In this document: positions 13,601 through 59,700 of the stretch, one piece after another
Position numbering within the stretch: the stretch's first letter is position 1
How the letters are laid out: every line of letters begins with the position of its first letter
NCBI GenBank assembly: GCA_964106915.2
Contig: OZ066914.1
Source of the DNA: Podarcis gaigeae
Lineage: Eukaryota
Strand: one strand, 5' to 3'
Length of the DNA: 64,000 bases
The notes under the pieces: model-generated
Told to the model about the DNA's origin: nothing
The model's database searches: none
Seen by the model: only the letters and a program-made list of their open reading frames with translations
Translations under genes and position numbers: made by a program

Positions 13601-16351
13601 TTCAGGCTCTGGACTGTTTCTGTGAAGCAGCCTCAGAAGTTGGAAAAGAGGAGTTTTTGGATAGACTAATTAGATCGGAGGATGTTGAAATGGCTTCAAC
13701 CCCACGGCTACAGTACTATGACAAGGTATTTTTGTTTCCAATCTTTTAACCTTTCTTGTAGAAGGTGTGGCATAACATGTACTTAACATTTTCACAAATA
13801 GTTCAGGTAAAAAATTCTTGGCTGAATATTCCCCTCCCTAGGTTCTGCGTCTTCTGGATACCATGGGTCTACCTGAACTGATCATTCAGTTGGCTACCTT
13901 AGCAATCACAGAAGCAGCTGATGATTGGAGAAGCCAAGTAAGGAATTAAGTTTTGCTGTTATGGGATGCGTGCCCTTCTCATCCAGCATTTGTTTGTGCC
14001 ACCACACAAATTTTCCAGCTGGTTATAGATGGCTTAACTGCCGTATTTGTATTGTAGGCTACCCTGAGGACATGCATTTTCAAACACCATTTGGATTTAG
14101 GACATAACAGTCAAGCATATGAAGCCATGACCCATAACCCAGATTCTAGCAGGTAATACTTCATATATTTTAGGCATTGATATACCTTATTTTTATGAAT
14201 CAAGTGCCAACTACAGGTGGTTGGGGTTGTTTTTGTTTTGTTTTTGGCTCTTTAAAAAACCCTGAAAATATTGCATAGGTTCTAAAGAGCTGTGTTTTTC
14301 TAATTTAAGACATTTATATACTGTTCAAATGTGTACACTGCTTTAAAATGTGAAAAACCAGTCCACAGAATTCACAGTCCATGATAGCAAAGAGTTACCT
14401 CTTTCTTTCTCCCTTCTAGGCAGCTGGATTGTTTACGGCAGTTGGTGGTAGTTCTCTGTGAACGCTCCCAGCTCCAGGATCTTGTGGAGTTCCCCTATGT
14501 GAATCTCCACAATGAGGTAAATGGTCTGCTTTTGTTAGCAGTAAGGTAGTGGTATAAGGAAATCTTCAGCTATGTCTAACTGTTGTTTGTATTATAGGTT
14601 GTGGGAATAATTGAATACCGTGCTCGGGCAGTAGATCTGATGACACATAATTACTATGAGCTGCTATATGCTTTCCACGTTTATCGCCATAATTACCGGA
14701 AAGGTATGACAGATTATATAAAAGAGAAAATTGCCCCACCTGTTAAAATGTCAATTCTTGTGGCATTGAATCAGATGATGATTTGTTTCCCATTAATGAG
14801 CAGTCTGTGCATGTGGTGAAAGAGTGCAGCCATGATAGCTAATCTGTGCTAGAGCAGGGGTTGGCAACCTGAGGCCCATGGGCCACAAGCGGCCCACGGG
14901 GGTTGTTTAACTGGCCCACAAGCCGCCCCCGAACCGAGCTGCCTGCTCGGCAAGACCCCGTGCACTGCGCTAAACCAGTGTGGCGCGGGGACTCACTTCT
15001 GCGACGCTGGAAATTGTGTCTGCACATGCGCAGATACCAGAAATTGTGGGCACGCACACACAATCCGGCCCACAGTGAGATCTCCACTGGAGTGAACTGG
15101 CCCAGGCGAGGTAAACCTTGCAAACCCCTGTGCTAGAGGATTAGAAAAGCCAAGTCCTAAACCCCATGTTTCTGTGATAAACACTAATGAGAGGGCCATG
15201 AAGGGGGGAGTATTTGCAGGGGAGAATGGTATGTGAGAGGATGCTCAACACTTTTGCTGCCCACTAATTCTCTACTGCATATATGCTCCAGGTGTATGAT
15301 TGGAACTATATATTTACTGAATATGTTCTTAGTTGAATGGAAAAAGTATATAATAGAAAAGTGTCGGGTGTTTTTGAAAGCTGAACACCACGGTGTAGGC
15401 TATATACGCATCCACGCTAAACAGCAAAACCCAGATTACTTTGAGGGAAGGCAGGGCAGTTAAACTAATATAAAGCTGCTGTACCCTGACTTCATCCATT
15501 TATTTCCTCAATACTGACAACCTTTAAAATTAGGAATATCTCCTGTTTTAGTGTCCAGCTCTGAAGTTTTACAAATTTTAATTTCTCTTTTGGTTAGTTT
15601 TTCCTCCTCTCCACTAGATCATAGGTGATTTTCAAGTTGTTTCTACTTTAAGTTCCTACTACAGCCTGTTCTAACCTGAAGCTGTTATATTTCAGTTGGG
15701 GAAGAGGTGACTGTTGTATTGTCTTATTTCTTTCCTCAGCCGGAACAGTCATGTTTGAATATGGAATGCGCCTTGGCAGAGAAGTCCGTACCCGCTCTGG
15801 ACTGCAGAAGCAAGCAAACTGTTACCTTGCAGCTCTTAATTGTTTGCGGCTCATTCGCCCTGAATATGCATGGATAGTTCAGCCAGCTTCTGGTGCAGTG
15901 GTATGAAACATCCCCTTTTTCAAGATTTGATCTCACTTTGATTATTAGCAGTCTCTTTTTCATGAAGACCTTGGCTGCTGTTTGCAAGTATGTTTAAGAT
16001 GGCAGCAACCTCTGTCACACTGCCTGGTTCACAGATCACATTAAATCATGTTTAACTCTAGTTTGACACAGATTTGCAATGTCCTCATACAGAAGTACTC
16101 AGAAATTCCTGCTTTGCTTCTCCCACACTCCTAGTCATTGTGCCCTGGGAGCAACAAAGTGAAAACTTTGACTTGTCATGTCATCCAAACCCAGGCCCAT
16201 GATCTGATTCTCCCAAAACCAGCCTTTCTCAGCCTTTGATTCCCAGATGATGTTGAACTACAACTCCTATCATCTCTGACGAGCTAGCTAGGGATGTGAG
16301 TTGTGGACCCACAATTGAGAAAGGCGGCTCTAAACAAACCACAAGCAGTAG

Positions 16352-16395
<44 letters not shown>

Positions 16396-19300
16396 TTTCT
16401 TTGCTTTTTTGCTCCCACCCAGTCTGGTGGGGGAGGAGCGGTGGCGATTTTAAAGCGGTGTTCACTACAATGCAGCTTATTCACATTAAACAGTTATTAA
16501 ACATAAATTGGTTTAACATAATGTGCAAACACAGCCAGTATGTCTACTGCTAATTCTTGTGCTGGCGTCCCAATAACAAATAATTAGAAATAAAGTAGCT
16601 TGTCTTGTACAGTGGAACCTTGGAAGCCGAACGCCTGTAAACTCGAATGTTTGGCTCCCGAACAATCGAAAACCAGAAGTGATTGTTCTGGTTTTTGAAT
16701 GATTTTGGAAATTGAACGTCCGGCACGGCTTCTGCAGCTTCTGATTGGCTGCAGGACACTCCTGCACCCAATCAGAAGCCACGCCTTGGAAGTTGAACAT
16801 TCTGGAAGTTGAACAGACTTCCGGAACAAGAATTAGCAGTAGACATACTGGCTGTGTTTGCACATTATGTTAAACCAATTTAAGTTTAATAACTGTTTAA
16901 TGTGAATAAGCTGCATACATAGAATATAACCCTATGAATATTTATAATAGCTGTGTAACCACTTGTTCTTGTGCTGGAGTCCCAATAACAGCTATTATAA
17001 ATATTCATAGGGTTATATTCTATGTAGCATGCAACAAAATGTTCCATCAGCTCAAGGATTTCTCCTTGTGCAACTGAACTTAATCCCCCCATCGCCCTCC
17101 TCCACATGCCCCCTAGATCTGTTCTGAGGTTTCCCCAAACCTTCTAGAGCAGATATGGGGTCATGAAGAGAGGGGAATCACATTGCACTAGCACTAACCT
17201 TTGCACTAGCACAACTATTCTGCCCATAGTAATGTTCACTGAATAAAAATATGCAGAATAAGTAGATATGCAAGTTTGCTTCCTTTGCTTAATTGATTCC
17301 GGCTACAGAATTTGCCATTTTCTTGCAAGTCAAACTGAGGATGTCACTTTGCATGTTTCTGCACTGAAATCTTGGGAAACATAGACAGAATCCTGGTGGT
17401 GCTTAAACACTAGTGAAGATGTTGTTGTAGAGACTGAAGATTTGTATATCCAGTTGTTTAGAGTGCTTATCCTATCTCACACTAGTATGAACGTCCAGGA
17501 GCATCCCCCAAGAGAAGTCATGATGGAGAGTGTGCTGCTGCCCCAAGTGAGTCTTCTGCTGTTCCACTTTCTCAAATGCAGATAATTCCAAATGTCTACC
17601 CTTAAATTCCGATCAACCAGCTTAATTTTTCTGACTTACTCGCTTTCCAGCTTATGTTTGGGTAGTTTTGATTCATGTTTGCAGGGCATTTGCCTTTAGT
17701 CTTGTCCTTCCTGTCCTCCCATATCTCCCATACCCTCCCATATCTTGTCTACATATTTTTATCTGTGTTATGCTAGTTATCTGGGATGTCTCCTTGAGAT
17801 GTGAGAGTCAGGTGCACTGGTTTCTTACCCACATAGCTCAGTATTTTGAATTGATCGCAGTAACTGTGCAGTAGACAGTGTTGTCTGAGCTGTTGTTGGG
17901 GGCAGAATAGGTATGAGCTATGAAAATACAACCACTATTCTGGAGGGCCAAAAGGGCACAGGATTGGCAAGTTAAGAAGACTTCTGTATTTTCATTAGTG
18001 CTGAGGGGAACATTTTTCTCATCACTGCAGCACTACAGGAAGAAAGGATATGGGAACTTTACAGCCTATGATCTTAATGGCATTTCTTAACACAGGAAGG
18101 CAGGGAAACATATGATAGTCTTTTGGGTCAGCCATGTGACCCTAGATTCCTCCTTCAGTTCGTTCCCTGTTTTCACCCTGGACTTAACCTTTTTCTTCCA
18201 GCTCCCTTCAGCCTCCTCCGGATGTACAGTGGTGCCTCGCAAGACGAAAAGAATCCTTTCCGCGATTCTCTTCGTCTAGCGGTTTTTTCGTCTTGCGAAG
18301 CAAGCCCATTGACAGCTTAGCGGATTAGCGTTTTAGCGGCTTAGCGGATAAGCAGCTTAGCGGCTTAGAAAAAGGGGAGGGGGGAACCCCGCAGGAACTC
18401 GCAAGACATTTTCGTCTTGCGAAGCAAGCCCATAGGAAATTCGTTTTGCGAAGCACCTCCAAAACGGAAAACTCTTTCGTCTAGCGAGTTTTCCGTCTTG
18501 CGGGGCACCACTGTAACTCTTAACTTTGGATCTGTGTGCATTATTCTTCAATTTCACAGCTGCCATTGGTGTTAGTTTTGGAATGCCTTCAGCATCTGTC
18601 TTATACTTTCATCTAACATAATTAAAGGAAGAGCCTTGGGTCACATGGCTGGCCCAAAGGACTATCATATGTTTCATTGCCTACTAGGGTTATTGGTGGA
18701 TATAATCCAGCATATTTGATGTCTTGCCCTAGTTAGAACATTCATGGTAAGGGCCCAACATTCCTATTTATGATAATACCAAAGAAAATTCTGTTGTCCT
18801 TGTTCAAATAGGAAATCAGGATAAATATAAATATTAATTTGCAGATGACTTCAATACATCCAGCTAATCAGCTGCCCCCTTATAAAGTTAATGATTAGTG
18901 GGAAACCTTTTATGTGTAAAAAGTTGGGGTTGACTAAAAGAAAGCTAGTATAGTAGCTGTTCATCACTCAAGAGCAGAATTTTGCCTTTTTATTGCCTGG
19001 TTTAACTTTGAATTCTCAATAGTAGACTCTTGAAGTTGCCACATTGTAAATAAATGATTATTTTGGTACAGCGGGAAGCCGGATTGAAATCTTGGAGCTG
19101 CAGGATTTGGAAAAGGAATGTGTGCTGGCTCGCATACGGCTAACTTTAGCACAACATGATTCAACAACAACTGCTATTACAGGTAAGCTCAGGAATTACG
19201 TTCATACTACTTGGCTTAATAACTGTACAGAGGGTGAGCAATTTAATCTCTGTGTGGGAGATCAGTAACCCACAAGAAATGTATTTCCACATCCTCCTGT

Positions 19301-27392: not shown

Positions 27393-27571
27393 CATAGCTG
27401 TCAACCTTTCCTTTTTTTTGCGGGAAATTCCCTTATTTCAGAGCCGTTTCCCGCTGCTATCCCGGATTGTTAGATATCCCGCAGACTGTCCCCGGGACAG
27501 GTGAGGCTGCCGATCCCTTATTTTCGAGGCTGTTGATCCCTTATTTTCAAATCTGAACGTTGACAGCTATG
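27393..27571. mobile_element. hAT (Tip100-like) MITE abutting the FNBP4 CpG island
   Basis: TIRs CATAGCTGTCAAC / GTTGACAGCTATG; perfect 8-bp TSD ATTAGAGT (27385-27392, 27572-27579). Confidence 0.92.
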
Positions 27572-27579
27572 ATTAGAGT

Positions 27580-28270
27580 AGTTGCTTTGGAAGAAGGATG
27601 CGCTAAGAAATGTCTCAGCGGCGAGCGCCGTCCGCGCGTTCGCGCGCCTGCCCTCGCTCCGGGCCCTTGTCAGGGAAACCGGCGCAGGCCCCGCCCCGGC
27701 ATCCCGACACCCTTTGCGCCCCGCCCCACCCTCGGCGGACAGGCAGGCCCAGGCGCCGCTCGCTTGTCTCCGCCTCGTCCGGCCTCTTCCCTCTGCCTTC
27801 TCCGGCGGCGTCTCCTTCGCGCGGGCGGAGTGAGGCTCGGAGCAGCTCCCATGGGGAAGAAGTCGCGGGCGGCGCCAGCGGGGCGCAGGCCTATCCTCCA
27901 GCTGTCGCCGCCTGGGCCTCGCGGAGGCCGGGAAGAAGCGGCACCGGGCGAGGGGGACTCGGCGTCGGAAGCGGGTGAGGGCGCAGGCAGGCAGGCCGCG
28001 CGGCCTAGGCGCTTGGCGGGGGGCTTCGTGTCCCTTCGGGGCTTCCGCTGAAAGAGATACCTGGTCTTGTGACGCTCAATGGGGCGCTTCCCCACCGCGA
28101 GAGCACAGGGGTTTTTTGTGGGGGGCGTTTAAGGGTTTGTTTATAAGGCCGCCTCTCAGCCCCCCTCCCACCTCCGGCGCCTTCGCCGCAGTAGTTTGGT
28201 CCCTGTGGTTGATCGTGTCACCCGGGTGTGTCCGGCTTCTGGCCCCGTTCCTTGCACTGGCGCATCGTTT
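27580..28270 (+). promoter_or_regulatory. CpG island promoter / first exon of FNBP4
   Basis: Sharp GC/CpG enrichment, GC boxes (CCCCGCCCC), spans the ATG at 27851. Confidence 0.88.
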
Positions 28271-31200
28271 CCACTATGTCAACACCATTATCCTAGTCCT
28301 CGTTGTTATCTTACGAGGTTCCCAAGGGCTCTTTCAAATTCATAATCTCGGTCGCCCTTCCCACTACTGGATGACCTGGGCCGTTGCTTTTGCCCATTTT
28401 GCAGACGGGAAGCCTGAGGCTGGGAGATCCTAACTTCTTCCAGGCCTCCTAGTCAGTTTGCCTGGGTTTGTTGGTACTCGCTGTGCTTCCTCACAGCCCG
28501 CCCCCCTTTCCCGGACTCTTGTTCTTCGATATGTTTAGCTTAATTCTATTGTCCCTTTAATCTAGTTAGCAAAAGCAGTGTAAAGAAATAAAGCTGAAAT
28601 CCTGTGCGGGCTTACTTGGGAGTTAGCATCATTGAGCACAATGGAATTAAATTTCCAGGTAAATTCCAATAGGATTGTGCTGCCTTTCTAGTCATGACCC
28701 TCTCATTCTCCAAGGTGGTGATTGCTCTATTCTGTACACAAAATAGACGTATAGATGCTTCCTTTTTTTCTCTTGATCCAACCTGTGCCTGTGGGATTAG
28801 CCTACCGAACAGGAGACACAATGTTTCTGAGTTCCTGTTCAGTCTCTTGTTCTACCTAGACTACTTGGTTCCTGTGCAACTTTAGCTTGGGCTGATGCTG
28901 CCATTTCAATAGGGATTAGTGTAGTGCTCTTGTGCATATTCGTATAGCAGGTATATTGTGAGGAGTATTGGTGTATGATGGAGGAGGATGCTGACTCCAT
29001 GTTACTCTACGACATTAGTGGGGAATCTTTGTTCCACAGGCTCAGTTAGGCCCACCAGATCCTTTCAGCCAAGCCACCCACCTGCCCTACATCTGCTGTC
29101 TATTACAGACAAGAGCTTGGATTAAAGGAGCTTTTTCTATGATATTCCTTGCAGAGGGCTGCCCAAGCACTGGCTATCAATGGATTGTCAGAGCTTGGGA
29201 AATTCTGTGCACAGGTTGTATACAATCAGCTGTCACGCATAGTGCTCCACAAGACTCAGTGATCAGCTAATCATCACTAAACCATGTAGGCAAAAATGGG
29301 TCATCTGATGTAATTGTGATGCCTGGTGATTGATAGGTAGACAGCCCCACCCACCTGTCAAACTTGGCCTGTGGGGTGGGTAGGAGAGAGAATGATCTGG
29401 ACAGGTGACTGGATGCATTTTCTATTTGTGCTCTCCAGCAATCCTAGTACCAGTACTGTGTAGTATAGTATAGTTCATATTATGTACATCCCCTTATTCT
29501 TGGGTGTTCTCATTTTTATTTATGTAATATATATTGTATTTATATCTTGCCAGCTTCCCAGGTGGCATTCCAGCCAAGCACTAACCAGACCCAGATGTGC
29601 TTTAGTATGTTCCCTGTAGCTTCAGAATATGGATGTTGTAGGCATGTATAGAAACATCAGTGTATAATTAAATCTGCATCTTTTAGCTTATTTATTTATT
29701 TGTTAAAATTTCCATTGTTATGCACCCCATTGTTATTTAGACTGCAAGCTCTATTTGTTTCTGTTGGGGGTGTTGTTTTGTAAAGCACAATGTACACTGA
29801 TTTGTGCGTGCATGTACACATTTATAAGTTTTCTTACCAACCCGTCACTAGAAACACCCATGGGTGGTTACAACAATATAATCATATAGTTATTAATACC
29901 AAGTAAAATGTTTATGGTTATAAAACATAGAACAGGAAACCCAACCAAAACAGTTTAGATTCACCATAAGAGGAGAGTGCCGCAAAACAATATACCTTTA
30001 CTGTCAAAGCCTAGGTCACTGCCTCTCATTGGTTTTCCTGAGGTGGGAATTCCAAATGATTGTGTTGAGCTGAAAAGGCCTTGTAAATTCTTGCTGATTT
30101 ATTTGCGGTAGCCTTTCTCTGATACTGATTTATTTATCAATCTGTAAGGGTATTGCCAGCCTAGCAGTTCGAAAGCATGTCAAAGTGCAAGTAGATAAAT
30201 AGGTACTGCTCCGGCGGGAAGGTAAACGGTGTTTCCGTGTGCTGCCCTGGTTCGCCAGAAGTGGCTTGGTCATACTAGCACATGACCCGGAAGCTGTACG
30301 CCGGCTCCCTCAGCCAATAAAGCGAGATGAGCACCGCAACCCCAGAGTCGGTCACGACTGGACCTAATGGTCAGGGGTCCCTTTACTTTACCTTTTTTTA
30401 AGGGTATTTATAAACTAGTAACTCATAAGAAAAATGTCAAGTTGATTGTGTTACAGGCTATTCCCAGCTAATGGGGTCCAAGAGGAAGGACGTGCTGTTT
30501 TGTAGGGTGATGGTAAAGAGATGGATTAGAGATGAATAGAATCAGATGAGTGATTTTGTGCTGTAGTAGCACATTTAAGGTCAGGCACAATAATTAAAAC
30601 ACTGTGTGGAATTTGTCTCTTCTCACTTGCAACAGCACAGGAATTACCCAGGTGGAAGGTCTTAACACTCAGGCAACCACATTCTACATAGCGTTCAGTA
30701 ACAATGATTACTCTAACTGAGGGCAAAGATTGTGCTTTCCCACAACAAAGTGTTATGACGCAAGTGCTATGAAAATCAGAGAAGGTGACTAGATGTCATG
30801 CAGCTGTTTATATATTGCACAGTAAAATGAATCTTCTGGCAAGATGCTAAGAAATTATTAGAATGGTGTAAAGAGGCCTTTACCAAAAATGATGTTATGA
30901 TTGTAATTGGCCAAAACTGAAGATATAGTTAGTTTTGCTTTTTCTAGCAGCACGCTGCTGTCTCTAAAACTGATTAAAAACAATAAAAAGCTAATTAGCA
31001 TAGGGGCTTGTGTCCTAAATAAAGAGTTTCCCTATATCTATATCTCATTCCAGTGTGTCTTAAGTATTTTTTCCCCTATCCCCTGGGATTGCTAGTTAAA
31101 TATGTATGCTAATTAAATTATATAACGTTTTACTCTCTTTAAATGTTGCTTTTGTTCTTGTTATGGTAGAAGTTTTGCTATTTCCTCAAATTATGGCAAA

Positions 31201-37200: not shown

Positions 37201-40200
37201 AGATGAGGAGCAGGACTTAAAGGTATGCGGGTTTATGGTTCTGCTGCGAAACCTAAGCAATATTACTTGAGGCAGTTCACACATTTCCAAATGTCTTCAA
37301 ATTGAGTTGGCTTTTTTCTCCTTTCTACTTTCTTTTCTTCAGTCAGTTGAAATTGCCACACAGGTATCAGTCCTTTTCATGGCATGATTAGGTGCTGCTA
37401 TACTGATTGGAGATACCTAAAGTATGCAATTGATTATTGACTGTCTGGAATCTGAGCACACAATGAATGTGTACACATGAAGTTTGTAGTTCAACTCAGT
37501 TTGAAACTGCCACCCTTCTTGTGGGTTATATTGGCCTTTAGATCCCTATCAGTACTTAACCTTGGCTAGGAGACTTCAAAGCTGTGTAGCTTTATTGTGC
37601 AGAGTAGTTTTGAAATTCTTCTAGGTTATTATTCTGTAGGGGTGCTTCTGATACTGCTTTTTAGTGACGTGTGTCAGGTATTAGTAGCAAATAATGTATT
37701 TCTTGATGGGAATTAGGAAGGTGTGGCACTTAAATGCAGTTGTTAATGTCTGTCAGAAATACTTAATTGGAAATAACATTCAGCCATTATGTTCTTTGTG
37801 TGTTCCCTATACCTATTATCCCTGTATTAAGTGTTGCTGTTTAGAAGATGTTGGCACTGGGAAATGGGACAGTCTCTTCTTGTGTGAGAATAAATTGAAA
37901 ATAGTTGCATTAGCCATATGGATTATCCATGTGTAACACTCGAGTTAAAAGTAGAGAAAATATTAGATAGCCTCAACGTATTCCTGCGAAATGGCTGCTA
38001 ATGCTGTGGGCAGAGCATACTTTCAGAATTTGGCACAATTTTTTGCCAATTGTAAGTTACTGGTCAGATCACACCTCTTTTTGTTAAAACAGATGGTGTC
38101 TTGTACACTTCAGCATTGCAATTGCCTTGTGCATTGTGACTAGCACAAAATTATTGACCCCTTGCTTGCTTTACTTCTGGCAGTTTCAGATTGGAGAGCT
38201 GGCCAACATGTTGATAAGCAAGCTGGAGTTCTTGGGCATCAGTAGACAATCCATCTCTAACTTCCACATGCTACTGTTGCAGACTGAGGTAACGAAAGTT
38301 TACCTTTTATTGAAAATTAACCATAGGGAGCCAAACAACTGGCAGCATTGCAGTGTGATAGGAATCTAGGAAGTTTTAAGTATTATGGCATGGATAACAG
38401 GCTTCCTCTCCCTCGTTCCTTCTCGCTCCCTCCCACTTGGCCCTCAAGCAGAATGCTTTAGTCCAGTAACGTATCTGAGGTTTTCTTGATCTATATGTAG
38501 TTCTCATCATGTTCTCTGTCATTAGTGCTGACTCTTGTATTAGTGCTACTAACATTGGGTGAGATTCATCTAACCAGTCTGATTTTTCCTTGTGCAACTG
38601 GGCTTCCCAGCCCTCTCCCTTGCATGCCCCCTGTGCCCTCCAAAATTGGCACAGGGGGGTCAGTAGAACCCACAGAACAGCATACATTGGGATAGGAGAG
38701 GAAGAGATGGTTCTGTCTGGCAAGCTGTCATGTGTGTGCAAACACAACAACTGACGTTGAATTCCACCCACTGTGTAGAACTGCAAAGTTAAGTGGAAAA
38801 TGATGTACATGAGACCAATTGTCTCTACAGGTTTTTCATTATTTTTCCTTGCCTGCTTGGTATAGACCCGTATTGCAGACTGGCGGGAAGGAGCTCTCCA
38901 AGGAAACTACCTCAAACGCAAATTGCAAGATGCAGCTGAACAGCTAAAACAGTATGAAATAAACGCCGCCCCTAAAGGCTGGTCCTGCCACTGGGACAGG
39001 TACGCACTCTTCTCCCCTTTTCACCTTTCACCTTTGACATCTCAGACATGATTTGTGACCATCACCACCTGCCGACGTGCCGTCATCTGTCTGGAGACTG
39101 AGAGCAGCTGCACTTAGCGGTGCTGAGCGGGCAGAGAGCCTCTGGCACATACAGAGTTTCAGCCAGCCACAAAAATTGGAGAAATATAAAGTCTGTGTTA
39201 AGTGTGTTGAAATGGATTTGATTCCGCGATTGGACAGAGCTGGTGTTTACTCTTGAGTGTAAATGCGCTAAGGAGGGCGGGCTTGGGGGGTCGCGCATGC
39301 GAGAGCTCTGTGCACATTGCAGGATCTCAGGAACTCCGCTCCCAAGTAACGCCTGTGTCCTTATGGAAAGCTCCCTCACTGAGGATCTCAACGAAGAACA
39401 AGATAACTGTCTCCTGCCAGCAGGTCAGACCAAACTATTTCTTCTTATATTTGCCTTTCTTGATTCTTTTTGTTTATTTGAAATCTTTGCTCTTTTGTTT
39501 TTCAGCTCCCAGATCCTCTCCCTCTCAGTAGCAATTCACTATGTCTGACACCAAGAGTATCATAAATGTGACTGCAGCAGTCCATGGGGGAGCAGCCATC
39601 TTTCATAAATTGGGCTGTTTCTCTTTTTGCTATTCTGGAAGGAAATGAATCCTGAGACTACCTAAAAAGTCTATTTCCTAATGCATCCTTGAACCTTTAA
39701 TTGCACACCAGCCACAAGCTGCTTCTATAACCCTCTACTTTTAGAGTGGAGGGTCAGGGCTGTGATCACAGAGCCAGCAGCGCAAACAGTTTGGAGTAAG
39801 CCCATCTTGCAAATCCTTCCTCAAAGCTGTTTGTTGCCTTTGTGAACAGCAGTCCTACTGTAAGAGGTTCTTCCTGTGAGAGCACTCCGCTGTCGCGGGA
39901 GAGGACTATATCATTGTGTCAGTGCAGGGGCGAGAGCATAAAACCTTGTTTTCTTTCTTGTGATTTAGGGATCATAGACGCTATTTCTATGTTAACGAAC
40001 AATCAGGCGAATCCCAATGGGAGTTCCCAGATGGGGAGGAGGAAGAGGAGGGGCAAATCGTAGAGAATAAAATGGAAGCTCTTCCTAAACAAGGACTAAA
40101 GGAGAAAATGGAGTCTGGTGCAGAATCGTCTGATAATACTACAGGTACTGGACCTTGAGGGTTTGCTAAAAGAAAGTTAACCCAGTTTGGAATAATGTTT

Positions 40201-43200
40201 TTAAGAAGGTAGGCTCCTTGTTATTACTTCTTGTAAGTATATTCAATGACCAAAGGCAGTTGCTCAGAAATCCTTTTTTGTATTGCAGTATTCAGCCAGG
40301 TGGAGATGAATTGAAATTAGTGCATTACTTGCAAAACAGTTTTCTGTACTAGGATGGGGAACCTGCTGGCCTCCAGGTGTTGAGTGCCCATCAGCCACAG
40401 CTAACAAGCCCTGTGGTCCTGTGTTAGGGCCTGTGGTCCTGTGTTTAGCAATATCCATAGTGCCACAATTTCCTCACTCTCATCTTTACCCACCTTTAGA
40501 GATATCACTGCCAATTGTTATGCATGTGGTTCATATAGCATACCCGCTATGCCATATTGACATGGGAAGTATAATTTCTTTCTGCTTGTATTGTTTTTCC
40601 AATTTGGTTTTTAAAATTGGGGGCTGGTTAGTGGGATCATTATAATACTTTCCCAATGAAGTTTTTCTTCTCTGAAAAGAAGCAGCATAACAGTGGAAGG
40701 AAAGTTGTAAGATGGGTGGATAGTTCTTGCAGGTATGGGGTAATTTAAAAAACCTACATGATGTTCTTTCATTTTTTTTCATTTTTAGGGTCTCTTCTTA
40801 AAGAGCCTCTTTCTAGTCAAAATGCAGCTACCTCTCTTGTGCCTCTCAGTCCATTTTGGACTGTGCTCCAGCCCTCTGTCCCTGTACTTCAGCCCCCTTT
40901 ACCTTTGGAAATGCCACCACCGCCACCACCCCCTCCAGAGTCACCCCCTCCCCCACCCCCACCGCCGCCCCCACCCCCACCAGGGGAAGATGGGGAAATA
41001 CAGGAAGTAGAGATGGAGGATGATGGAGATGAGGAACCACCAGCACCAGGAACAGAGGAAGATGCTGTACTGAAACCTCTTCTCCGACCAGCAGTTGCCA
41101 ACAGCCAAGTAAGTTAGTGCATATGGACCCTCTAGCCGTTCTATAAAAGCTAGTATCAGGCGTGGATTGACCTGTGAATGTGGCCACAGCTTTGACCTGT
41201 GAATCTTCTGCATTCTTGCATTTTATATTGTAAAACCGTCTTGCCCTCTTTGCCGCCTGTAGCATAAACTTTCTACTACAATCTTCTATAGCAGTCAGTA
41301 AATGAAAAGTAGTTTGTTTCTGCCATTCAAGTTTTGTGCCTTGTAAAACGTGTGTCAGAAAACGGATTTGTGTGACCCATATACAATATGGAAATACATG
41401 CTGTGATAGTGATGTTGCAAAGTGAGAAGCCAACAGAATGATTTCAGATAGAGTAAATGAATGTTGCTTTTTCACAAGAACTAAAATTGCCCATCAGATA
41501 ATCTGCAGTGATTTGATTTTTTAGTGTAAAAACTCCTACACATCCAAGACAATTTCCCTGAAACAACATGGAATTTTATAAGACATGCATGTTCCAAAAA
41601 TGTACAGAGACCATTTAAAAGAACCAAACTAATTGACATCTGTCTGCTTCCAGGCCAACTCTGAGGCCAACGTATCTGCACCTCTCTCCACTAAATCTCT
41701 TAAGAGAAAAGCTTCTGAAATCAGTGCTGGACTGGTGCAACGAGCAGCAACCATTGGAAGCTGTCCAGTGCTTTACGGGCAGTCAGTCATAGGTGTTGGT
41801 GAGTAACATCCACATCCTTCTGCTTAGCTGCTTGATATCCCTGGAAAAGTTTGGAAATAATTCTCATTTCCCCCACTTTGTGTATACAGGCCCTCAGACC
41901 CCAGGGGTGAGTTTGCAACAGAGTTTCCTTGGAGTAACGCAGCCGGCACTCATGAACTATTCTGAGTGTAGTGTGCCTGTTGGTCTTTCTGCCAGCACCA
42001 CACAGCCAGTTCCTACACAAGGAGCCGCTCCTGCCACTAGCACTACAGAACAGCTGTCGCCGCCTCCACCACCTCCTCCACTGTCCCCACCGCCACCCAA
42101 AACACTACCTCCAGAGAAGTCAAAGAAGCTTAGGAGAGCTGGCAAGGTGAGTACTTAAATTTGTACTTCCTGTCGTTGTACATGCCAGAAATTGGACAAG
42201 CTTCATATAGGTTGAAATGTGTATTATTTTACTCTGCTAGACTTTAGAACTGATACATCTTGTATGACAGTAGGTCCGGAATGAGCAACTTGGCAGCTTC
42301 AAAACTGGAAGCTGTTGGGATTTTAGAAACACATTACAGAAGGAGGTGCTCTTTTTAGGTCTTTGAGTCCACCAACTCCCCTGAGGCCTAATCACCTTAG
42401 AGATACCAAGCTGGTTCTGTTTGTTTTCTTGTTTGGGGGCCATTGTGGCTTTTGTGCTGGGATGTGTGCTCTGCTAGCCAGAACACTTTTTATGATCTAC
42501 TCTAATGTGAGATTAAGCAAAAAGAATGGGTAAAATCATTGTTTTCCTTCCTGTCTTGCCTACCTTATCCCTAATGAGAGTGAGAATGAAGAGTTCACGG
42601 AGGCCTAATTCTACTCATCAGGGTAACATGCTAAATATTTCCCCGCAGAGAAAAAAAACCAAGACGAAGATGCCCTCTCTTGTAAAGAAGTGGCAGAGCA
42701 TTCAGCGGGAACTGGATGAGGAAGAAAACTCCAGCTCAAGTGATGAGGATCGGGACGTGATCTCACAGAAGAGAATTGAGGAATGGAAACAGCAGCAGTT
42801 AATCAGGTATGAGAGAGACAGCAAGATACGGTCTGATAGCACCCCTCTCCTTGCATCGCCCAGTGTGATTTGCTTTAGGTAAATTAGTGCAGTGTGAACT
42901 GTCAGCCCATGGTTGCTGGTTTAAGTGACTTGTGCCACTGCAGGATTTAGGTTGGTCTAATTGTAGCTGTTCTTTTTTTAAAGGAAGATTGGAGAGTCTT
43001 GTCATGTTTTCAGGGGCATTGGAAAAAATTGAAGATGGGGAATGTAATACATGCAGAACAGAAGTGGATATGGGAGTTTCAGTAGACAAGCTTGTAGGCC
43101 TAATTTCCAGAAGTCACAGCACAACCTTGGGGGAAACCTTGTATGTGAGGCAGAAGAGAAAGAAATGTTATGTACTTGCAGCATTCGTTTAAAGAGTTAG

Positions 43201-43765: not shown

Positions 43766-45001
43766 GTCAACTTTGTTGTTATTTTGTTTTTTAACCACAC
43801 ATGTACAGTTCAGAAACTTTTACTGTTGGATAAATGTAACTTTTTGAGGATACATATTTTTCAGTTGAACGACCTGACAGAGAAATTGCGTGGACTTGTG
43901 AATCCTTTTAGAGGTGTATTTGGCAAATAGGCTTATGAAATAATGAATAGGCTTGACCACTCCTGTCTTAAACTCCTCCTAATCCCAGTTCACACAAAGG
44001 TGGAATACCATTATGTCCAGTTCCTGGGTAGAGCTGGTACCAGAATTTATTAATGCACTTTGTGGAGTTGGAAATGGAACCTGCCGTTTTGACTCTTCCT
44101 TGCTAAGCCCAAAAGTGTTCTTCCACTTCCTGGAAATATTTCTACAAGATGATGACCATTTGCAATTGGGTGTTACAGAACATGCAAATTAAAGATGCAC
44201 ATTCTTTTCACAACAGACACAGTTCTGCATGATTTGAACCCCTTGTTCCATTCCTAATGTTTGCCAGCACCTTGGTTTTGGTAGCATTGCTCTTCTTGCT
44301 AGATTTCATAGAATCAGTTCTTGTTTCTGTCCTAGAACCTGTATCAGACTAGCTATTTTTCCTGTAATGTTACCCTAGAATATACTTTTGGTGCTGTAAC
44401 ATGCTAATAGTTTCATTGGTGTGGCTATAGTGAGGTGGGACAGAAAGCAATTTTCAGCCTCCTCCACTGAGCACTTGAGCACTGACTGGTGGGTTGTTCC
44501 TAATGCCTTCATTGGTGGGCAAAGAGAGGTAGGGGTAGCTGGCTCAGCACTTAAGTCAGCACGAGCCAGTTAGCAGCTGTGTGCCTGCACATTGCTGTAT
44601 CAGCTGCTCCTGTCTCTGAATGCTCACTGGTGAAAGCATGGGGTGGATATGTTCTCCCTTGCTCACTATCCAGCACTGTTCCCCATCTCAGTAGCTGCTG
44701 CTTGGTGGGTGTGTACTAGAAGCCATTAGCAGTGAGGAGAGGGAAAATTAGCATTTCTCTGTTACTCAGTTCTGAGCCCCACTTGTCAGGTTCCAGCAAA
44801 ATTAGGGTCTTTGTCTACATTTAAAGCCAGGCTGAATATTTATCCAACCTGTCAATGTATTGCGTCTTTTCCCTTGTTTACTTTTTAAAAAATGGAATCA
44901 AGTGGTATTGATTTTCTGTAAATGAAAGAAAAGGCAGTTTATGGTTGAACGCTGTTTGTATTTCTCCAGTTTCTGGCTTTGTAAATTTGTACATATACAT
45001 T

Positions 45002-45007
45002 AATAAA
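45002..45007 (+). terminator. FNBP4 polyadenylation signal AATAAA with adjacent Pumilio-like TGTACATA (44988-44995)
   Basis: AATAAA after a 1.24-kb 3' UTR; several TGTA motifs upstream and U-rich sequence downstream. Confidence 0.7.
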
Positions 45008-46289
45008 ATCACTTTTTATACTTCAGAACCTTCCTTATTTTTCTTTGACTCTATTGGCAGTATTAATTGTAAAGTTCAATGACTTATGCTTGGGAATGTG
45101 ATGTTTTATACCACAGAGGTAGTTGGGGAGTAGTTGATACCAAAAACATGCTACTGCTCTGCTCAGTAAAACCATAGAATTATAGAAATTATATTCCCTG
45201 CTTCCAATAATATTTTTGAAAGGGAGGGCAGTAGTAAACAGAAGCTATACAGAGGGATTTAAAGTTATCTGATGGAAGACTTTTTGGAGGCTTGTTTTGG
45301 TTACTTTTATCCTTAAATAGTGCCTCTCATCACTGACTGAAGAAAAAGAAATCTGATCTTATTGGTTTCCTAGAAAAACATGCTTCCTGAAAATCTAGCT
45401 AAACAATACTTAGTTTTTACATATGCCTAAACTTAGTATAGTCTAAACTTACAGACAGTCCTGTAAGGTAGATTAATGTTAACCCCATTTTTCAGATTGA
45501 GAGCTGAGGCTGAAAGAGAGTGGCTTGTCTAAGGTCCATCATTTCTAGAGCTTCCACTAGCTTTTGTTGGCAGGAAAGTAGGAACTGGAGGACAGTGGCA
45601 TACCAAGTAACTGACTCCCCATTCCCTGGATCCCATCTCTTCCTATTTTTCCACTTAAAACTGTAGTTATGATAGCATGGTGCTTAACTGTTGTGATTTT
45701 AATCACTTAAAGTATTTTCCTCTTTTAACGAAAAGCATAGTGTACAAGTATACAAAGAAATTGATTTAAAATTTCTACTACTATTGTCATCTAACAACTA
45801 ATTTCTTACAAGTTCATTTTTTAAAGGAAGGAAATAAACTTTTCCCTAGATGCTAACCCATAGGAAGAAAGAACTACCAAGGTTTTGTCAAAAAGTCCTA
45901 ACTTTTTCGTTCATGCTGTCCGAATGCTCTTTTCTGTAATACAGCAGTTCAAACCTGGATGATTCTGTCTCATGGGAAGGTAGTCTTTTTACAATTAGAA
46001 ATACAATCTAACCATAATTACTGCTCCTCACTTTAATCTACACTCTGCTGGAAGTTTCCATAATTGCAGGGTAATTACAAGTGAAATGTAAATAAACAGC
46101 ACTCAGAATAAAATTACAGTGTTTAAATATTTCCTGCATCTATTTTTAAATGATTCTCTGCAAATTTCCTTTTTATGTAGCTTAGTAATTGCCTTTATTT
46201 TGCTCAGTGCATGGGTGTATCCAAGTGTGGACAGGGAAGCAGTCCCTCCCCCCCCCCCCACAATCAGTAAAAAAACCAGCTTCTCTCCC

Positions 46290-46899: not shown

Positions 46900-47520
46900 C
46901 AAAATGGCCCCAGCCTACCCCGGACTGAGACATAAGACTGTGAAACGACAATGTTCGGACAGAAGCAAGAGGTCCCTCCCCACCTGCACGAAAAAAGCCC
47001 CAAACCCCACCAGGCGAGAAGCTATCCTAGTTCAAGCAATGGCTTGTACCGCTGCCACTCGCACTGACGGACCAATGAACGGCTAGTCCCACCCCCATCC
47101 TGTCTAGTTCTGGCGTGGCTGGTAACTAGGATACTCTGCCCCCCACTCCTCTGAGTAGTGGTAGCTAAGAGGGGAAGAAGGCGGCCGGGGCGGGGGGAGC
47201 GCTCCTGAGAGCACTGAGGGGCGGGCAGGGGGCGGGCACGAGAGTCACATATCTGGTCCTGCCACTCCCTGCCCCCCGTCCCGAGATTGGGCGAATGTTA
47301 TTGGCTCAGCCCGCGTGCGAGCGAGCGGCCTCCAGTCGACGGTTATGAAAAGCAGGCGCGCGCGCCGGTCCCGTGTGCGTCTGCGGGCGTTTTGTTGTGA
47401 GTGACCAAAGCAGTGTCGCCATAGAAGCCTTTCAGCTTCGTATGGGTCGGCGGAAAGGGTTGCCAGGCGCTTGAGGTAGAATAACTTTCTTTTGGCCTGA
47501 GTCAGAGGAAGCGCAGGTCA
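46900..47520 (+). promoter_or_regulatory. CpG island promoter and non-coding first exon of AGBL2 (GC boxes, CCAAT boxes, RFX X-box at 47122-47134)
   Basis: CpG cluster, GGGGCGGGG boxes, CCAAT/ATTGG motifs, GTAACTAGGATAC X-box; probable donor GAG|GTAGAA near 47475. Confidence 0.75.
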
Positions 47521-47797
47521 CCTTTTTAAAAGCCTGCTTTGAAGCCTCTTCTTCCGTATCTTTCATTTATCCATAATATCCCCGTCCCTTTGTCACAATT
47601 AACCTTCTCTCTCACACACACACAACGCCACACCGACTTCGCGGGGAATCTCATGGGTGGAGACTGGCAGAATAATCAGCCTTTGCTGTTCTTGCCAAGT
47701 GGAAGACGAGGCTACTTCATATAGGCTTTCTTTTCTTATTAACGCCTTTTCTCCGCTTCTCTGCAGGAGGCATCATCAGATAGTTGTGCTGAATGAC

Positions 47798-50700
47798 ATG
47801 TGTCCGGCAGATCCAGCATCTGAGGTCAGTACAAAAGTCAGTCCAAAAATGTACGGGGCTAGATGGGGTCAGTCACCTCCTGGTTCTCAACTGGTTTTAA
47901 GTACTGGTGGGATGCTAGAAAATCTTTCAGATCTCTTCAGCGGAGATTAGAATGATACGCTTTGATTGTGTTTGGTTCGTTTTGAGATACTGCGCACTCA
48001 GAGAATTTATTCTTTATCTCAGCATTGTAACTTACAGGGTAGCTTAGTGGTTAGAGAGTGTCGGACTAGGACCTGTGAGATCAGGGTTCGAATCCCAACT
48101 CAGCCATGCAACTTGCTGAGTGAGCTTGGGCCAGGCACTTTCTCAGCCTAAACCTCAAAGGTTGTGAGGATAAAATGGGAGAGGTGAGAACCATGTGTGC
48201 TGCCTCGAGCTCCTTGGAGGAAAGGTGGGATGTAAATGTAGTAAATAAATAGCAATGGATGCCGTGGTTTTGGTAAATGAGGCTCATTGTGCTCATTCCT
48301 CATTTTCCCTTCCTTAGCAGTTTAGAGAGCCATATGAAAGGTTCATACATCAGCATCTTCAATACTATGGCTATTTCAAAGGTAAGAATCTGATCCCAAT
48401 CTGGGATTGGGTCCCATACAGATCGGTTTGTTTTATTTTATCTACCATTATCAGGCTCTGTAACTGATTGCTATAAAACATTTTCAGACATTTCTAAATG
48501 TTTTTAATTGTTTTGCTGTTTGCTGCCCTGGACTCCTTTGAGAGGAAGTGTAGCATAGAAATGTAATAAATGAATAGTCCTTAAGGTGCCAAAAGACCCC
48601 TCATTGTAATTTCCCCCTTATACCCAAGTTATAACTAGCAATACTTGTTGACTTTAGTGGAATTTACTTCAGAATATGTGTATGCAATATCTTACTTTAT
48701 TTGTCTACCTAATATCTGTTATGTTAGATCTCTGTAAGGCTTCAGTGAATTCAGTGAGACCTATTTCTGAGTAGACATATATAGGATTGCACTGTAGATT
48801 GACATAGTCCCTCCTTATTATTTGGATGACACTGATAGCTATGCATACAAGCTATGCTACTGGCATATAAAAAGTAGCCCTAGTACTATAATGTTAGTTT
48901 TAAATTTTTAATCAGTGGGTTTTTCATGCCAGTATAGTAGCTCACTACAATAACGATAAGCTCAGAAATAAATTGATTTTGCCTATATTAGTTTGGGCTA
49001 GTTTTTCACATTAATAGTAGCATTTCCCCCCCCCCCCCCAGATGAAAATGTTCCTCAGAGCCCCAGTTTGCCTCTTGAAAGTTGGAAGAGTTCTTGTCCT
49101 GTGTCGAAGCCGGGTAACTTCCACAAGAAAAGTAGAGCAGAAAATAATTCAAGCAAGAACACATTCTGTAAGTAAGATGTAAGCCTGATATGAGAAATAT
49201 ATTGATTGAGTTGCTGTGAATGAACTGTATGATTGTGGTCTCATATCTGCAAGGCTCCTGGGTATCTGTAAATAAATTTCTTTTGTATTATTTCTTTTCC
49301 CTTTTCAGGTTCACTTATGATGGAGACTGCACTTCTTAAAAGCAACCAACTTACGTTTGACCATCCAGAGGGGCCTGGTATTCCACGCTTGAGAGAACCT
49401 CGGAATCTTTTTTCTGTTCCCAATGATTCACTGTTGGCTCCACTCTGGCCAGTAGAATGTGAAGTGATCAAGGATTATATCCACCACATTGGTAATTTCT
49501 TGGATTGAAATCAATGTTTTACATGGTTGATAATGTTTTGCTTTAAAGCTTTATGGCTATACAAGGACTGTGACTGAATACTTTTTCATTTGCACAAATC
49601 CAGATAAACAACTCAAAAATGAACAATGTAAGTTTAAGATTCTCTTGGGCCGTTTTAAAATATGTGAATATATAATACCCAATCACTTTTCATAGTGCTT
49701 CCATACTAAAAGAAACAAACCATTATTTCAGTTGGCTCTATGGAGATGAGATTCCCAATTTTGTTATAAATGTATTGTGGATTAAATAACCATTATGGTG
49801 GCAGGATTTAATTAAGACCATTTCTCACATTCCCTTGTTATAGCAAAGAAATCAATACTTTGGTTAGGAAAATATGTAAAATATAATGTGTGAATAGTGG
49901 TATCAGTGTATTTGAGAAGCCAAATGCATTGCCATTTCAGTGTTTGTCACCAGATGGACAAGTGTAAGTTTAATATTGACTGTCACTCACTTTTTATTTA
50001 ATAAGATCAGTTAATGAGGTCATAAAATTAATATTGTGGGGGGAAATCTATGTGTTAGCTGTGACTCATAACTTGGCATTATCAGGAAATTTATCATTAC
50101 TATGGTCTCTAATGAAAATGTTTCTAAAATAAGCCCCAAGAGTCCGATCTCTTAGAACCTTCATTGATTTGGCTTTTATTTTGTGTGCTTTCCTTTCTCC
50201 GGAGTTCCAGGGCTGGAGAACTTGATCCAGCTGGTGGGCCAAATCCTGACATCTCCCATGGCTACTTTAATAGGTGGGCAGGGCCACCCATCTGTTAACC
50301 CCATGACTTACCATGGCATCAGGTGACAGACCACACAGACCAAATTAGGACCACTGCTGGACCTAATTTGGCTTGTAGGCCAAAGTTTTCCTATCACTAC
50401 TCTAATTCATGTTACAGCACATATAGTTTTCAGTTTAAGTAATTTTATTTGTATTCCATTCTTCCTACTTATTTGTTTTCCTTGTCATACAACTAGAGAT
50501 TGAGGGGAAATACTTCAATTCTTATTTAATGTCTAATTTTTTTCCTTCTAAAAGTACAAATAAGGCCACAATAGAAATAAATGTCTTTATGTATTTTGTT
50601 AGAGTGGGTTCCTCCTGAACCTGAACCTTTCTATCAGCCAACAGAAAATGAAATGGCTCCAGAAGTAATGGGAGAGGATCATGGAACTGTTGTCTATGTC

Positions 50701-56700: not shown

Positions 56701-59700
56701 ATAGGAAGATACTTTTATCTTCCTAACAATTTACATTATAATGCCCAGATTTTTCATCACTTAGCTGAAGTAAACATTCTGGCTTATATTTTTTAGATTC
56801 AGTCATTCCACACTTGAAGTGATATGACAGCAGATGATGCATATTGAATCTAGGTTGTTTTTTCCTGCTCTGAGCTAAAATATAATTTCAAACAAACTCT
56901 TCATTTGGTTCCAATATGAGATTAGTAAAACATTGGGTGATGTCCAGCTAAGTCATACTCGGAATAGACTCACTAAAATCAATGGGCTAAAGTCCATTGA
57001 TGTTAGTTTGTCTGTTCAATGACTAACATTAGATGTCCAGATTAGTTAATGTATACATAAAATGGTCTTGGGTGATGATAATTTAGGAATTGACTGAGAA
57101 ATAATATATGTTGAATATACAGGAATTTTTAAAATACTAAGAATGGTTCTATATAGTAATGTAAATAGAGAAGATGTTCTAGTATTTCAAGAGGTGTCTG
57201 CTTGGCCACTGCGGGTTAGATGGACCCTTGGTTGATCCACCAGGGCTTGTCTTCTGTTCTAAAGAGAGATAATAAATTAGTTTTTAAAATACAATCTAAT
57301 TTTACCAATCTGGATGTTTAGTTTTCTTTCAACAGCTGTAAGTTTCAAGTCCAAAAGTGCAAAGAAGGAACAGGACGGGTTGTGATGTGGCGAATGGGGA
57401 TAGTGAATAGCTATACTATGGAATCTACATTCAGTGGGACAACTCTGGGTAAGTGTACATTTTTGTCCAAGACCAAAGCAGACATTATCTGTCAATGAAA
57501 AGCTGGTGGTATACCGCAGTACAGTAGTGGGATGTAGCAAAGGACTGACTGACTTGGGGGGGGGGGCGACATTCACTTTTGGCCAGCCTTCCAGGGATCA
57601 CATAGCAGCTGTGAGTGTAGCTGCCCCACATTATTGCAACCACAGGACACATACATGCACATGCATGCAGAATACACACAGAGGCACGCAGAGCCTTTCC
57701 CCTCAGCTGATCCATTATCACCTCCATCACATCTATTTTTCCATTATCATGCTCTGTAATTTCTGGCTTGTCATAACACTGGATAGAAAGGTAGGAAGAA
57801 AGAAAAGAAAGAGGTTAAGTTATAACCTCTGTTTCAATCATCAATGTATTTAATAGTTTTAAAAGACATTCAGCATATAATTTTTCCATGCTGGATGTTG
57901 TGTACTGGAGTGTAATTTGCTAAAGACTGAAGAACTACTTGTCTGTTTGTCTTTCTCAGGCAATAATAATAACTCTCATTTTACCTATGAGGATCTCAAA
58001 TCTCTGGGCTACCATGTCTGTGACACCTTATTGGACTTTTGTGACCCTGACCGTTCTAAGGTAAGAGTTTCCTGTTACTGCTAAGCAGGGTCAAAGGACA
58101 ATGATGGACCAGCCAGTGTCTTTAACTATTTCCTGTTTTTCTGAGACCAGCCTCTGATACTGCCTTTTTTACTTTTCACATTTTGAAAAGGTGTCTATTG
58201 AAAGCCAGAGATATTTGGATTTGTAATGGAAGCATGGTCGGATACAAATCTGAGACATGCATTTAGCAAAGCTCCTAGTTTCCTCTCGGCTGCTCATATA
58301 TCTGAGATGTGCAAAAATCTTCAAGTAGTTATTATTTATTTCATAAATTTATATACTGCTTGATTGTAAGAAAACCCCCCGAAAGTGGTTTAAAAAAACC
58401 TTGAAATGGTTAGCAAATCTATTCTACCCTGAGTGCTTCAATTCTGCTCAGATGAGATATTTGCTAACCAAAAAACTGCATTATGTAAGTTTTTAATCGG
58501 CAGTTCGTCCATGCTTTCTACCCTTTCTCTTAGTTTCAGCAATGCCTATCTGAACTTAAGGAACTACTGAAGCAAAAAATCCAGAGAAAGCTCTCAGAGC
58601 TGGGCCATGTACAAAACATAGATGGTACTTGGAGTGACATCTCTCTATCAGATGTTGAATCCAGGTAACTCAAGTCTGCAAGCTTTTACTGACTCGAACC
58701 TTAGAGAAATGACAAGAAAATAGTGCTGACAACAGGTGACGTTCCAGGCTTTATTGACAAATTAAAACCTGACATATCACCCAGTCCAAATGGCATCTAC
58801 TAAAAAGTTCTTAAAGAACTTAAATGTGAAATTGCTAATCTTCTTAAAAAATATGTAATTTGTCCCTAAGATCAGTCCCCATACCCAGGGATCAGATGTA
58901 ATACCAGTTTTTTTTTAAAGGATCAGAGATGATTTGGGATATTACAGACCAGTTAGCTTACCATCTGTTCCAGTACTGATAATTGATTCCTACTCTCTGC
59001 TTCCTGTTTCTTAACTAATTACTGACTCATAAGAGGATCTCTCCTCTTATTCCATGCCTGCTAAGTTTACCCAGGAAACATTGGTCTAGAATTTTATGAA
59101 AAGCTTTTTCAAATTCTAAGTACAGTGGTGCCCCGCAAGACGAATGCCTCGCAAAACGCGCAAGACGAAAGGGTTTTTCGGTTTTTGCGTCGCTTCGCTA
59201 GACGATTTTCCCATGGGCTTGATTCGCAAGATGAAACGTCTTGCGAGTTCTTGCGAGTTTGTTTCCTTTTTCTTAAAGCCGCTAAGCCGTTAATAGCTGC
59301 TAAGCCGCTAATAGCCGTGCTTTGCAAGACGAAAAAACCGCAAGACAAAGAGACTTGCGGAACGGATTAATTTCGTCTTGCGAGGCACCACTGTACACAA
59401 TGTCAACTGGATCATCTCTGTTTCACATATATTGCACAGGAGGCAGAATAGCAGTTGCTGGAAACCACAGGAGTAAAAAGTGCTCTTGTGCTTGAATCCT
59501 GCTTGCATGTTTTCCAGCCACTGTTCAGCCACTGTGAAAACAAGATATTGGACTAGATGAGCCATTGGCCTAATCCTGGGGGTCCTTATGTTCTTATGTT
59601 GCCCTGCATCACACCAATGGTTTCCTTTTCCTTTAATTAGCACAAGTGGCTCAGACAGTTCCCAGTCAGATGGCCCCCCTGCACATTTGCTCAACATGGA

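What the first reader, a model, noticed from the sequence alone, without database searches (positions are those of the whole stretch)
39000..39968. FNBP4 intron 11 looks like a self-contained RNA regulatory module that controls whether WW2 is made
Seen: the intron falls inside WW2 (W-S-C-H-W-D|R-D-H-R-R-Y-F-Y). It has no recognisable TE and keeps about 20 CpGs in 969 nt (about 16 in the first 400 nt) while neighbouring introns are CpG-depleted, which usually indicates purifying selection. It has a weak donor (AG|GTACGC) and many long helices. Retention reads R-YALFSPFHLSPLTSQT-stop (TGA 39049-39051), giving a product of about 590 aa with WW1 only and no proline-rich C-terminus, or an NMD / nuclear-detained transcript. 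Established: splicing-associated factors (SR proteins, CLK1/4, DDX5, SF3B1) often regulate themselves through conserved detained introns and poison exons, and FNBP4 is a nuclear WW protein linked to the spliceosome. Inference: this intron is an RNA-structure-based feedback switch for FNBP4.
Basis: partly seen in the sequence, partly recalled or inferred. Interest (0 to 1): 0.85.

Follow-up and report, generated by a model that had tools for sequence, protein, structure and literature searches.

The report
Conserved decoy-exon intron in FNBP4
One intron in the FNBP4 gene has been kept from cartilaginous fish to mammals, most likely because it works as a brake on splicing: it hides a small stop-creating exon and a row of RNA hairpins and is often left in the message, a known type of control that has been listed for this gene but, as far as I found, never studied.

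Summary
The intron (39000-39968) is real and under strong selection. It is the only FNBP4 intron that aligns end to end to turtle, tinamou and kangaroo rat (74-78%), and it stays 956-980 nt in six of seven vertebrates while intron 10 varies 100-fold. RNA contigs from other species show whole-intron retention, 3'-half retention and 5'-half retention, so both cassette splice sites are used. Conserved structure is confined to the 3' half: four hairpins, one covering the exon 12 polypyrimidine tract. The CpG-rich 5' half shows no excess folding, and the donor is not weak. Papers already list the human cassette as a candidate decoy exon and report regulated retention in mouse neurons and altered splicing in human muscle. 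Best reading: a detained intron with a decoy/poison exon (SF3B1, OGT, ARGLU1 class). FNBP4 autoregulation and a WW1-only protein are untested. The scan index held no earlier FNBP4 note.

The parts
38865..38999 (+). FNBP4 exon 11 (ends inside WW2, phase 2)
   Evidence: tblastn with turtle and kiwi FNBP4
39000..39968 (+). Intron 11, conserved retained intron, 969 nt
   Evidence: end-to-end alignment 74-78% to turtle, tinamou, kangaroo rat; length 956-980 nt in 6 of 7 species
39000..39061 (+). Most conserved block: donor plus pyrimidine-rich tract with a cryptic AG at 39044-45 and the read-through stop at 39049-51; alignable to sawfish
   Evidence: 88-96% identity in the 39021-39070 bin; sawfish match extends to 39060.
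39062..39322 (+). CpG-rich conserved motif region upstream of exon 11a (G-runs, a GCAUG motif, weak atypical acceptor); no excess folding
   Evidence: 88-96% identity in 39271-39320; 5 of the intron's 21 CpGs are invariant in four amniotes, all in the 5' half; z +1.5
39323..39423 (+). Exon 11a, 101-nt cassette (poison/decoy exon); frameshift here, in-exon stop in mammals, frog and teleost
   Evidence: acceptor and donor conserved; 47 database proteins include it; each junction seen in an RNA contig; human 103-nt cassette in a decoy list
39430..39530 (+). U-rich tract after the 11a donor, then a conserved strong cryptic acceptor (AG ends 39505) and pyrimidine block
   Evidence: about 60% U in tetrapods; 90-94% identity in 39471-39520; no use of this acceptor seen
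39586..39624 (+). Hairpin H1, amniote-conserved
   Evidence: consensus z -4.9; alignment fold
39730..39754 (+). Hairpin H2, sauropsids only
   Evidence: 5' arm not kept in kangaroo rat
39756..39856 (+). Hairpin H3, about 35-bp stem with variable loop
   Evidence: z -4.2 to -7.2 in 4 of 5 species, antisense -0.2; arms 81-88% vs loop 39-52% identical; covariation not significant
39866..39907 (+). Hairpin H4, tetrapod-conserved
   Evidence: formed in all six tetrapod single-sequence folds; two-sided changes
39924..39961 (+). Hairpin H5: purine-rich arm pairs with the exon 12 polypyrimidine tract; possible branch-point A in the loop
   Evidence: formed in all five amniote folds; H4+H5 covariation score 0.29 vs 0.215+-0.023 in shuffles; G-U rich, so less certain
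39969..40144 (+). Exon 12 (rest of WW2); stop at 40061-40063 in the frame entered through 11a, 81 nt before the next junction

Best explanation
FNBP4 intron 11 is an ancient detained intron built around a decoy/poison exon. The spliceosome can excise the whole intron (productive mRNA with intact WW2), or engage the internal 11a splice sites. Engagement leaves one or both halves unspliced, giving nuclear-held polyadenylated RNA, or completes 11a inclusion, giving a premature stop and an NMD target. Shown: conservation, use of both 11a sites, all three retention forms in other vertebrates, and a stop on every retention route and on 11a inclusion spliced to the normal exon 13 acceptor. Inferred: 11a causes the retention (decoy action); the U-rich tract and G-runs bind splicing regulators; the 3' hairpins, especially H5 over the exon 12 pyrimidine tract, slow 3'-half excision; the net effect is signal-responsive control of FNBP4 dose.
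For: Only intron aligning end to end across amniotes; fixed length while intron 10 spans about 160-16,000 nt. 11a length varies (98-114 nt) and its coding is not kept, but its splice sites are. RNA contigs with other introns spliced: L002 teleost, whole intron retained; L007 rodent, exon 11-11a spliced and 3' half retained; L008 mammal, 5' half retained and 11a-exon 12 spliced. Sixteen non-primate Logan ORFs of 407-657 aa on 2-5 kb contigs read into the intron. Human cassette listed among 2398 prospective decoys (PMC12017769). Same intron shifts by more than 0.1 PSI in human muscle (PMC12534703). Mouse Fnbp4 i11 is stably retained and spliced on neuronal stimulation (PMC9627664). Fnbp4 RNA is 19- and 38-fold nuclear-enriched (PMC1800850). 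Hairpins.
Against: No reads from this lizard or its relatives could be laid, so retention here is inferred from orthologues. Logan contigs are assembled paths and give no abundance. No minigene, UPF1 or fractionation test of 11a was found. Sawfish keeps the 11a donor but not the AG at the aligned acceptor. Covariation rests on 5-6 sequences and is not significant for H3. Hairpin boundaries were chosen after a scan. The nuclear enrichment figure is for the transcript, not this intron.
Confidence: 0.78

Rival explanations
1. Plain poison exon: 11a inclusion followed by NMD is the regulated step, and the retained forms are only slow intermediates of cassette splicing.
For: Inclusion gives a stop in lizard, mammals, frog and teleost. 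36 bird and turtle models join 11a to exon 12. U-rich tract after the donor and GCAUG before the acceptor are typical cassette regulators (known motifs, not tested).
Against: Conservation covers almost the whole intron, and its length is fixed. Retention is stable after transcription block in neurons. Whole-intron retention appears in otherwise spliced contigs.
Confidence: 0.12
2. Structure-first switch: the intron folds into a module that senses FNBP4 or another ligand and gates splicing, with 11a secondary.
For: Four conserved hairpins in the 3' half, sense-strand specific for H3, one covering the pyrimidine tract.
Against: The best-conserved blocks lie outside the hairpins and do not fold better than shuffles. 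No significant long-range helices: 23 seen vs 14.6+-5.1 in a conservation-preserving null. The hairpins were not recovered in teleost or sawfish, where retention or conservation persists. FNBP4 has no known RNA-binding domain (own knowledge).
Confidence: 0.06
3. DNA-level element: the CpG-rich 5' half is an internal promoter or enhancer (two CCAAT-like boxes, a GC box and an NRF1-like GCGCATGCG), and 11a can act as a first exon.
For: Motifs seen by eye at about 39175, 39230, 39275 and 39293, kept in tetrapods; the GCGCATGC core is also in sawfish. CpG o/e 0.43-0.78 in all seven species.
Against: Several CpGs have decayed to CpA/TpG in kangaroo rat, as expected for methylated DNA with site-specific selection. 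It would not explain conserved splice sites, the 3' hairpins or the fixed length. Exon 11-11a splicing is seen.
Confidence: 0.03
4. Protein-isoform switch: retention or 11a inclusion exists to make a WW1-only or WW2-less FNBP4 protein.
For: The 16-residue tail is identical in lizard, camel and bat. 31 models (birds) restore the frame with an acceptor 83 nt into exon 13. WW1 alone mediates FMN1 binding (PMC12159680).
Against: The tail changes frame or length in turtle, starling, a rodent, frogs and fish. Mammals stop inside 11a and this lizard stops in exon 12. The open shifted frame in birds is expected, because most exon 12 peptides in the set hold a single L/I/V/M codon, the only codons that can create a stop in that frame.
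Confidence: 0.04

Closest known systems
Decoy-exon retained introns: SF3B1 intron 4, OGT intron 4, ARGLU1, DDX39B, SNRNP70, FUS (Parra et al. 2018, PMC6097662)
   Same: Highly conserved retained intron holding a non-coding cassette whose junctions are detectable; nuclear regulatory gene.
   Different: About 1 kb, at the lower size edge of the class; fixed length; one main cassette; a hairpin row in the 3' half; decoy activity not tested.
FNBP4 entries in existing datasets: Govindan and Conrad 2025 Supplementary file 7 (PMC12017769), Mazille et al. 2022 (PMC9627664), PMC12534703, Hutchinson et al. 2007 (PMC1800850)
   Same: The same intron: a 975-nt human intron with a 103-nt cassette about 317 nt from its 5' end; mouse primers match the rodent contig L007 in 11a and the 3' half.
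   Different: List entries or validation examples only; none of the passages found discusses conservation, structure or mechanism. Mazille's forward primers lie inside 11a, so their 'spliced' product is the 11a-exon 12 junction, which carries a stop, not the productive mRNA.
Conserved poison exons of splicing factors (SRSF family; own knowledge) and SF3B3 stem-loop with concealed branch sites (PMC11162794)
   Same: Conserved stop-creating cassette; conserved intronic hairpin near a 3' splice site.
   Different: Autoregulation is shown for those genes, not for FNBP4. Here the hairpins lie downstream of the cassette and cover the next constitutive exon's pyrimidine tract.

Membership tests
Decoy-exon detained intron | Intron retained in otherwise spliced transcripts | tested here: met
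   L002, L007, L008, in other species; not testable in this lizard
Decoy-exon detained intron | Internal cassette with conserved 3' and 5' splice sites that can splice to flanking exons | tested here: met
Decoy-exon detained intron | Cassette is non-coding (stop or frameshift) | tested here: met
   exception: bird models with a frame-restoring exon 13 acceptor
Decoy-exon detained intron | Retained form is nuclear and stable | not testable with these tools
   literature only: PMC9627664, PMC1800850 (transcript level)
Decoy-exon detained intron | Cassette splice sites are required for retention | not testable with these tools
   needs a minigene or antisense test
Poison exon (AS-NMD) | Stop more than 50-55 nt upstream of a downstream junction | tested here: met
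   stop 40061-63, 81 nt before the exon 12 donor at 40145
Poison exon (AS-NMD) | Isoform rises on NMD inhibition | not testable with these tools
   no FNBP4-specific value found
Autoregulatory splicing-factor loop | Host protein level changes the splicing of its own intron | not testable with these tools
   no data found
Conserved structured RNA element | Folding better than shuffles in orthologues, with covariation | tested here: inconclusive
   3' hairpins fold well; covariation modest for H4+H5, not significant for H3; 5' half not met
Rfam ncRNA (snoRNA, miRNA, cis element) | Match at gathering score | tested here: not met

The most novel reading that the evidence does not exclude
The intron is a two-part switch: a sequence-coded decoy exon in the 5' half plus a conserved hairpin array in the 3' half that hides the exon 12 pyrimidine tract, with their spacing held near 970 nt since early jawed vertebrates. 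Signals such as neuronal activity would release only the 3' half, so 'splicing completion' sends the detained pool to NMD instead of to protein.
Probability: 0.2. Interest if true: 0.72.

Novelty: new member of a known kind. Interest (0 to 1): 0.46.

Why it matters
Few decoy exons are characterised (OGT, ARGLU1, SF3B1, per PMC12017769). This one is compact, conserved across jawed vertebrates, splits a WW domain, and already has published stimulus responses in neurons and muscle, so it is a ready minigene model for how decoy exons and intronic hairpins work together. It also suggests that a published example of activity-induced splicing yields a stop-containing RNA. The mechanism class itself is not new.

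Tried and rejected
They were used only in local scripts against loci already fetched. Two later look-ups used protein ids of other mammals (P0234, P0212), whose sequences cover the orthologous region. No human contig was fetched. Four Logan ORFs (P0205, P0214-P0216) were at least 99% identical to macaque in a sorting BLAST, may be human, and were dropped; human coordinates come from papers only. The spliced window protein was not searched as a joined model: exon 7 alone was searched by reference. Rfam: nothing. Whole-intron or long-range structure: rejected; a first null was too lenient and was replaced. Weak donor: rejected. Conserved read-through peptide and bird dual-frame isoform as the selected product: judged unlikely. 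Pri-miRNA reading of H3: unlikely, since the 5' arm differs at several positions among amniotes and there is no Rfam hit. Locus look-ups failed for P0003, P0157, P0028, P0220. Searches for FNBP4 with 'poison exon' gave no paper. The sigma-70 scan is irrelevant here.

Full report
Observation. The intron runs 39000-39968 (969 nt), is intron 11 of an FNBP4 gene starting at 27851, and splits WW2 in phase 2. It has 21 CpG, 16 of them in the first 400 nt. The excess is confined to the 5' half (o/e 0.57 vs 0.16 in neighbouring introns, P about 1e-5). The read-through stop is at 39049-51. Two descriptive claims fail. The donor is mid-range among the gene's donors. The intron as a whole folds no better than intron 9 (z -1.3 vs -2.1), and its CpG-rich half folds slightly worse than shuffles.

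Conservation. I fetched orthologous loci for tinamou (L001), snapping turtle (L004), kangaroo rat (L006), Hymenochirus (L005) and sawfish (L003), and three RNA-derived contigs (L002, L007, L008). Intron 11 is the only intron of the gene that aligns end to end to turtle (78%), tinamou (74%) and kangaroo rat (76%). Its first 460 nt align to frog and its first 60 nt to sawfish. Its length is 969, 974, 980, 966, 956 and 972 nt, and 750 nt in Hymenochirus, whereas intron 10 ranges from about 160 to 16,000 nt. Purifying selection is therefore shown, and a recent TE is excluded.

The intron holds a cassette exon, 11a, at 39323-39423. Its donor is kept in all seven species and its acceptor in six; sawfish lacks the AG at the aligned place. 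Its length varies from 98 to 114 nt and its coding is not conserved. Mammals, frog and teleost stop inside it. The lizard shifts frame and stops at 40061-63, 81 nt before the next junction. Forty-seven database proteins include it: 36 bird and turtle models join it to exon 12 and 9 mammalian ones end at the internal stop. A U-rich tract follows the donor, then a strongly conserved cryptic acceptor at 39505 with no sign of use.

Retention in RNA. Three contigs from sequencing runs have the other introns they cover spliced out. The teleost contig keeps the whole intron. The rodent contig splices exon 11 to 11a and keeps the 3' half. The other mammal contig keeps the 5' half and splices 11a to exon 12. 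Sixteen non-primate Logan ORFs of 407-657 aa, L002 and L008 among them, read from spliced upstream exons into the intron. These are assembled contigs and give presence, not level. The spliced window protein was never searched as a joined model; one exon was searched by reference. No human contig was fetched, and four primate-like ORFs were dropped.

Structure. Sliding consensus folding against a conservation-preserving null gives z of -3 to -9 only in windows from 39540 onward; coding-exon controls range from +1.5 to -2.5. H3 (39756-39856) is a stem of about 35 bp with z -4.2 to -7.2 in four of five species, sense-strand specific, with conserved arms and a divergent loop. Its covariation is not significant. 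H4 (39866-39907) forms in all six tetrapods folded alone. H5 (39924-39961) pairs a purine-rich arm with the exon 12 pyrimidine tract in all five amniote sequences. H4 and H5 together beat the pair-shuffle control (score 0.29 vs 0.215+-0.023), but with six related sequences and a structure derived from them this is only suggestive. Long-range helices are not in significant excess, and Rfam has no match.

Literature. Govindan and Conrad list a 103-nt cassette in the 975-nt human FNBP4 intron among 2398 prospective decoy exons taken from Parra et al. (PMC12017769); size and offset match 11a. The same intron changes by more than 0.1 PSI in human muscle after a lifestyle intervention (PMC12534703). 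Mouse Fnbp4 RNA is one of six transcripts more than 10-fold nuclear-enriched in two cell sources (PMC1800850). Mazille et al. validated Fnbp4 i11 as a stable retained intron spliced on neuronal stimulation (PMC9627664). Compared by eye with the rodent contig, their forward primers lie in 11a and their intron primers in the 3' half. The product they measured is thus the 11a-exon 12 junction, which carries a stop. I found no paper devoted to this intron.

Mechanism. The best-supported model is a detained intron with a decoy/poison exon. Shown: selection, use of both internal sites, three retained forms in other vertebrates, and stops on the non-productive routes. Inferred: that 11a causes retention, that the hairpins slow 3'-half removal, and that the purpose is FNBP4 dose control. 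Feedback by FNBP4 itself has no support either way; the papers found place it with nuclear FMN1 and actin, through WW1. A truncated-protein purpose is unlikely, because the read-through tail shifts frame among species. The full-length WW2-less bird models depend on a shifted frame that stays open for lack of L/I/V/M codons.

Verdict. A real, ancient regulatory intron of a known class, already present in catalogues but not characterised in the papers I could search. The additions here are the depth of conservation, the fixed length, the hairpin row and the reinterpretation of the neuronal result. Interest 0.46.

Noticed in passing
window 40789-40872 (exon 13): Alternative acceptor 83 nt into exon 13. 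In 31 models (birds) it restores the frame after 11a and gives a full-length protein with a broken WW2; the frame is also open in snapping turtle but closed in this lizard and in mammals.
   Followed up: partly
window 39175-39301: Two CCAAT-like boxes, a GC box and an NRF1-like motif upstream of 11a; could be RNA motifs (G-runs, GCAUG) or a DNA element.
   Followed up: partly
window 39424-39430 with 39543-39549: A 7-bp pairing could cover the 11a donor in four amniotes; not above the null.
   Followed up: partly
window 39231-39241 with 39304-39314: Inverted repeat that would cover the 11a acceptor tract; good in sauropsids, weak in kangaroo rat and frog.
   Followed up: partly
window 44926-45031: Conserved 3' UTR block (94% over 81 nt to turtle, 81% to kangaroo rat) with a poly(A)-signal hexamer near 45002.
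   Followed up: no
window 18001-18500, 59001-59500, 14501-15500, 30001-30500: Other CpG-rich patches (o/e 0.4-1.0) outside promoters; possibly young insertions.
   Followed up: no
window 27500-28500 and 47000-48000: CpG islands: the FNBP4 promoter and probably the promoter of the next gene.
   Followed up: no
L006 15271-20431; L004 4334-4550 and 9385-9601: Kangaroo rat exons 8 and 10 lie out of order, and turtle exon 8 appears twice; probably assembly faults, outside intron 11.
   Followed up: no
L003 about 28600-28724: Sawfish keeps the 11a donor and upstream motif but has TG instead of AG at the aligned acceptor; it may use the site as an alternative donor only.
   Followed up: no
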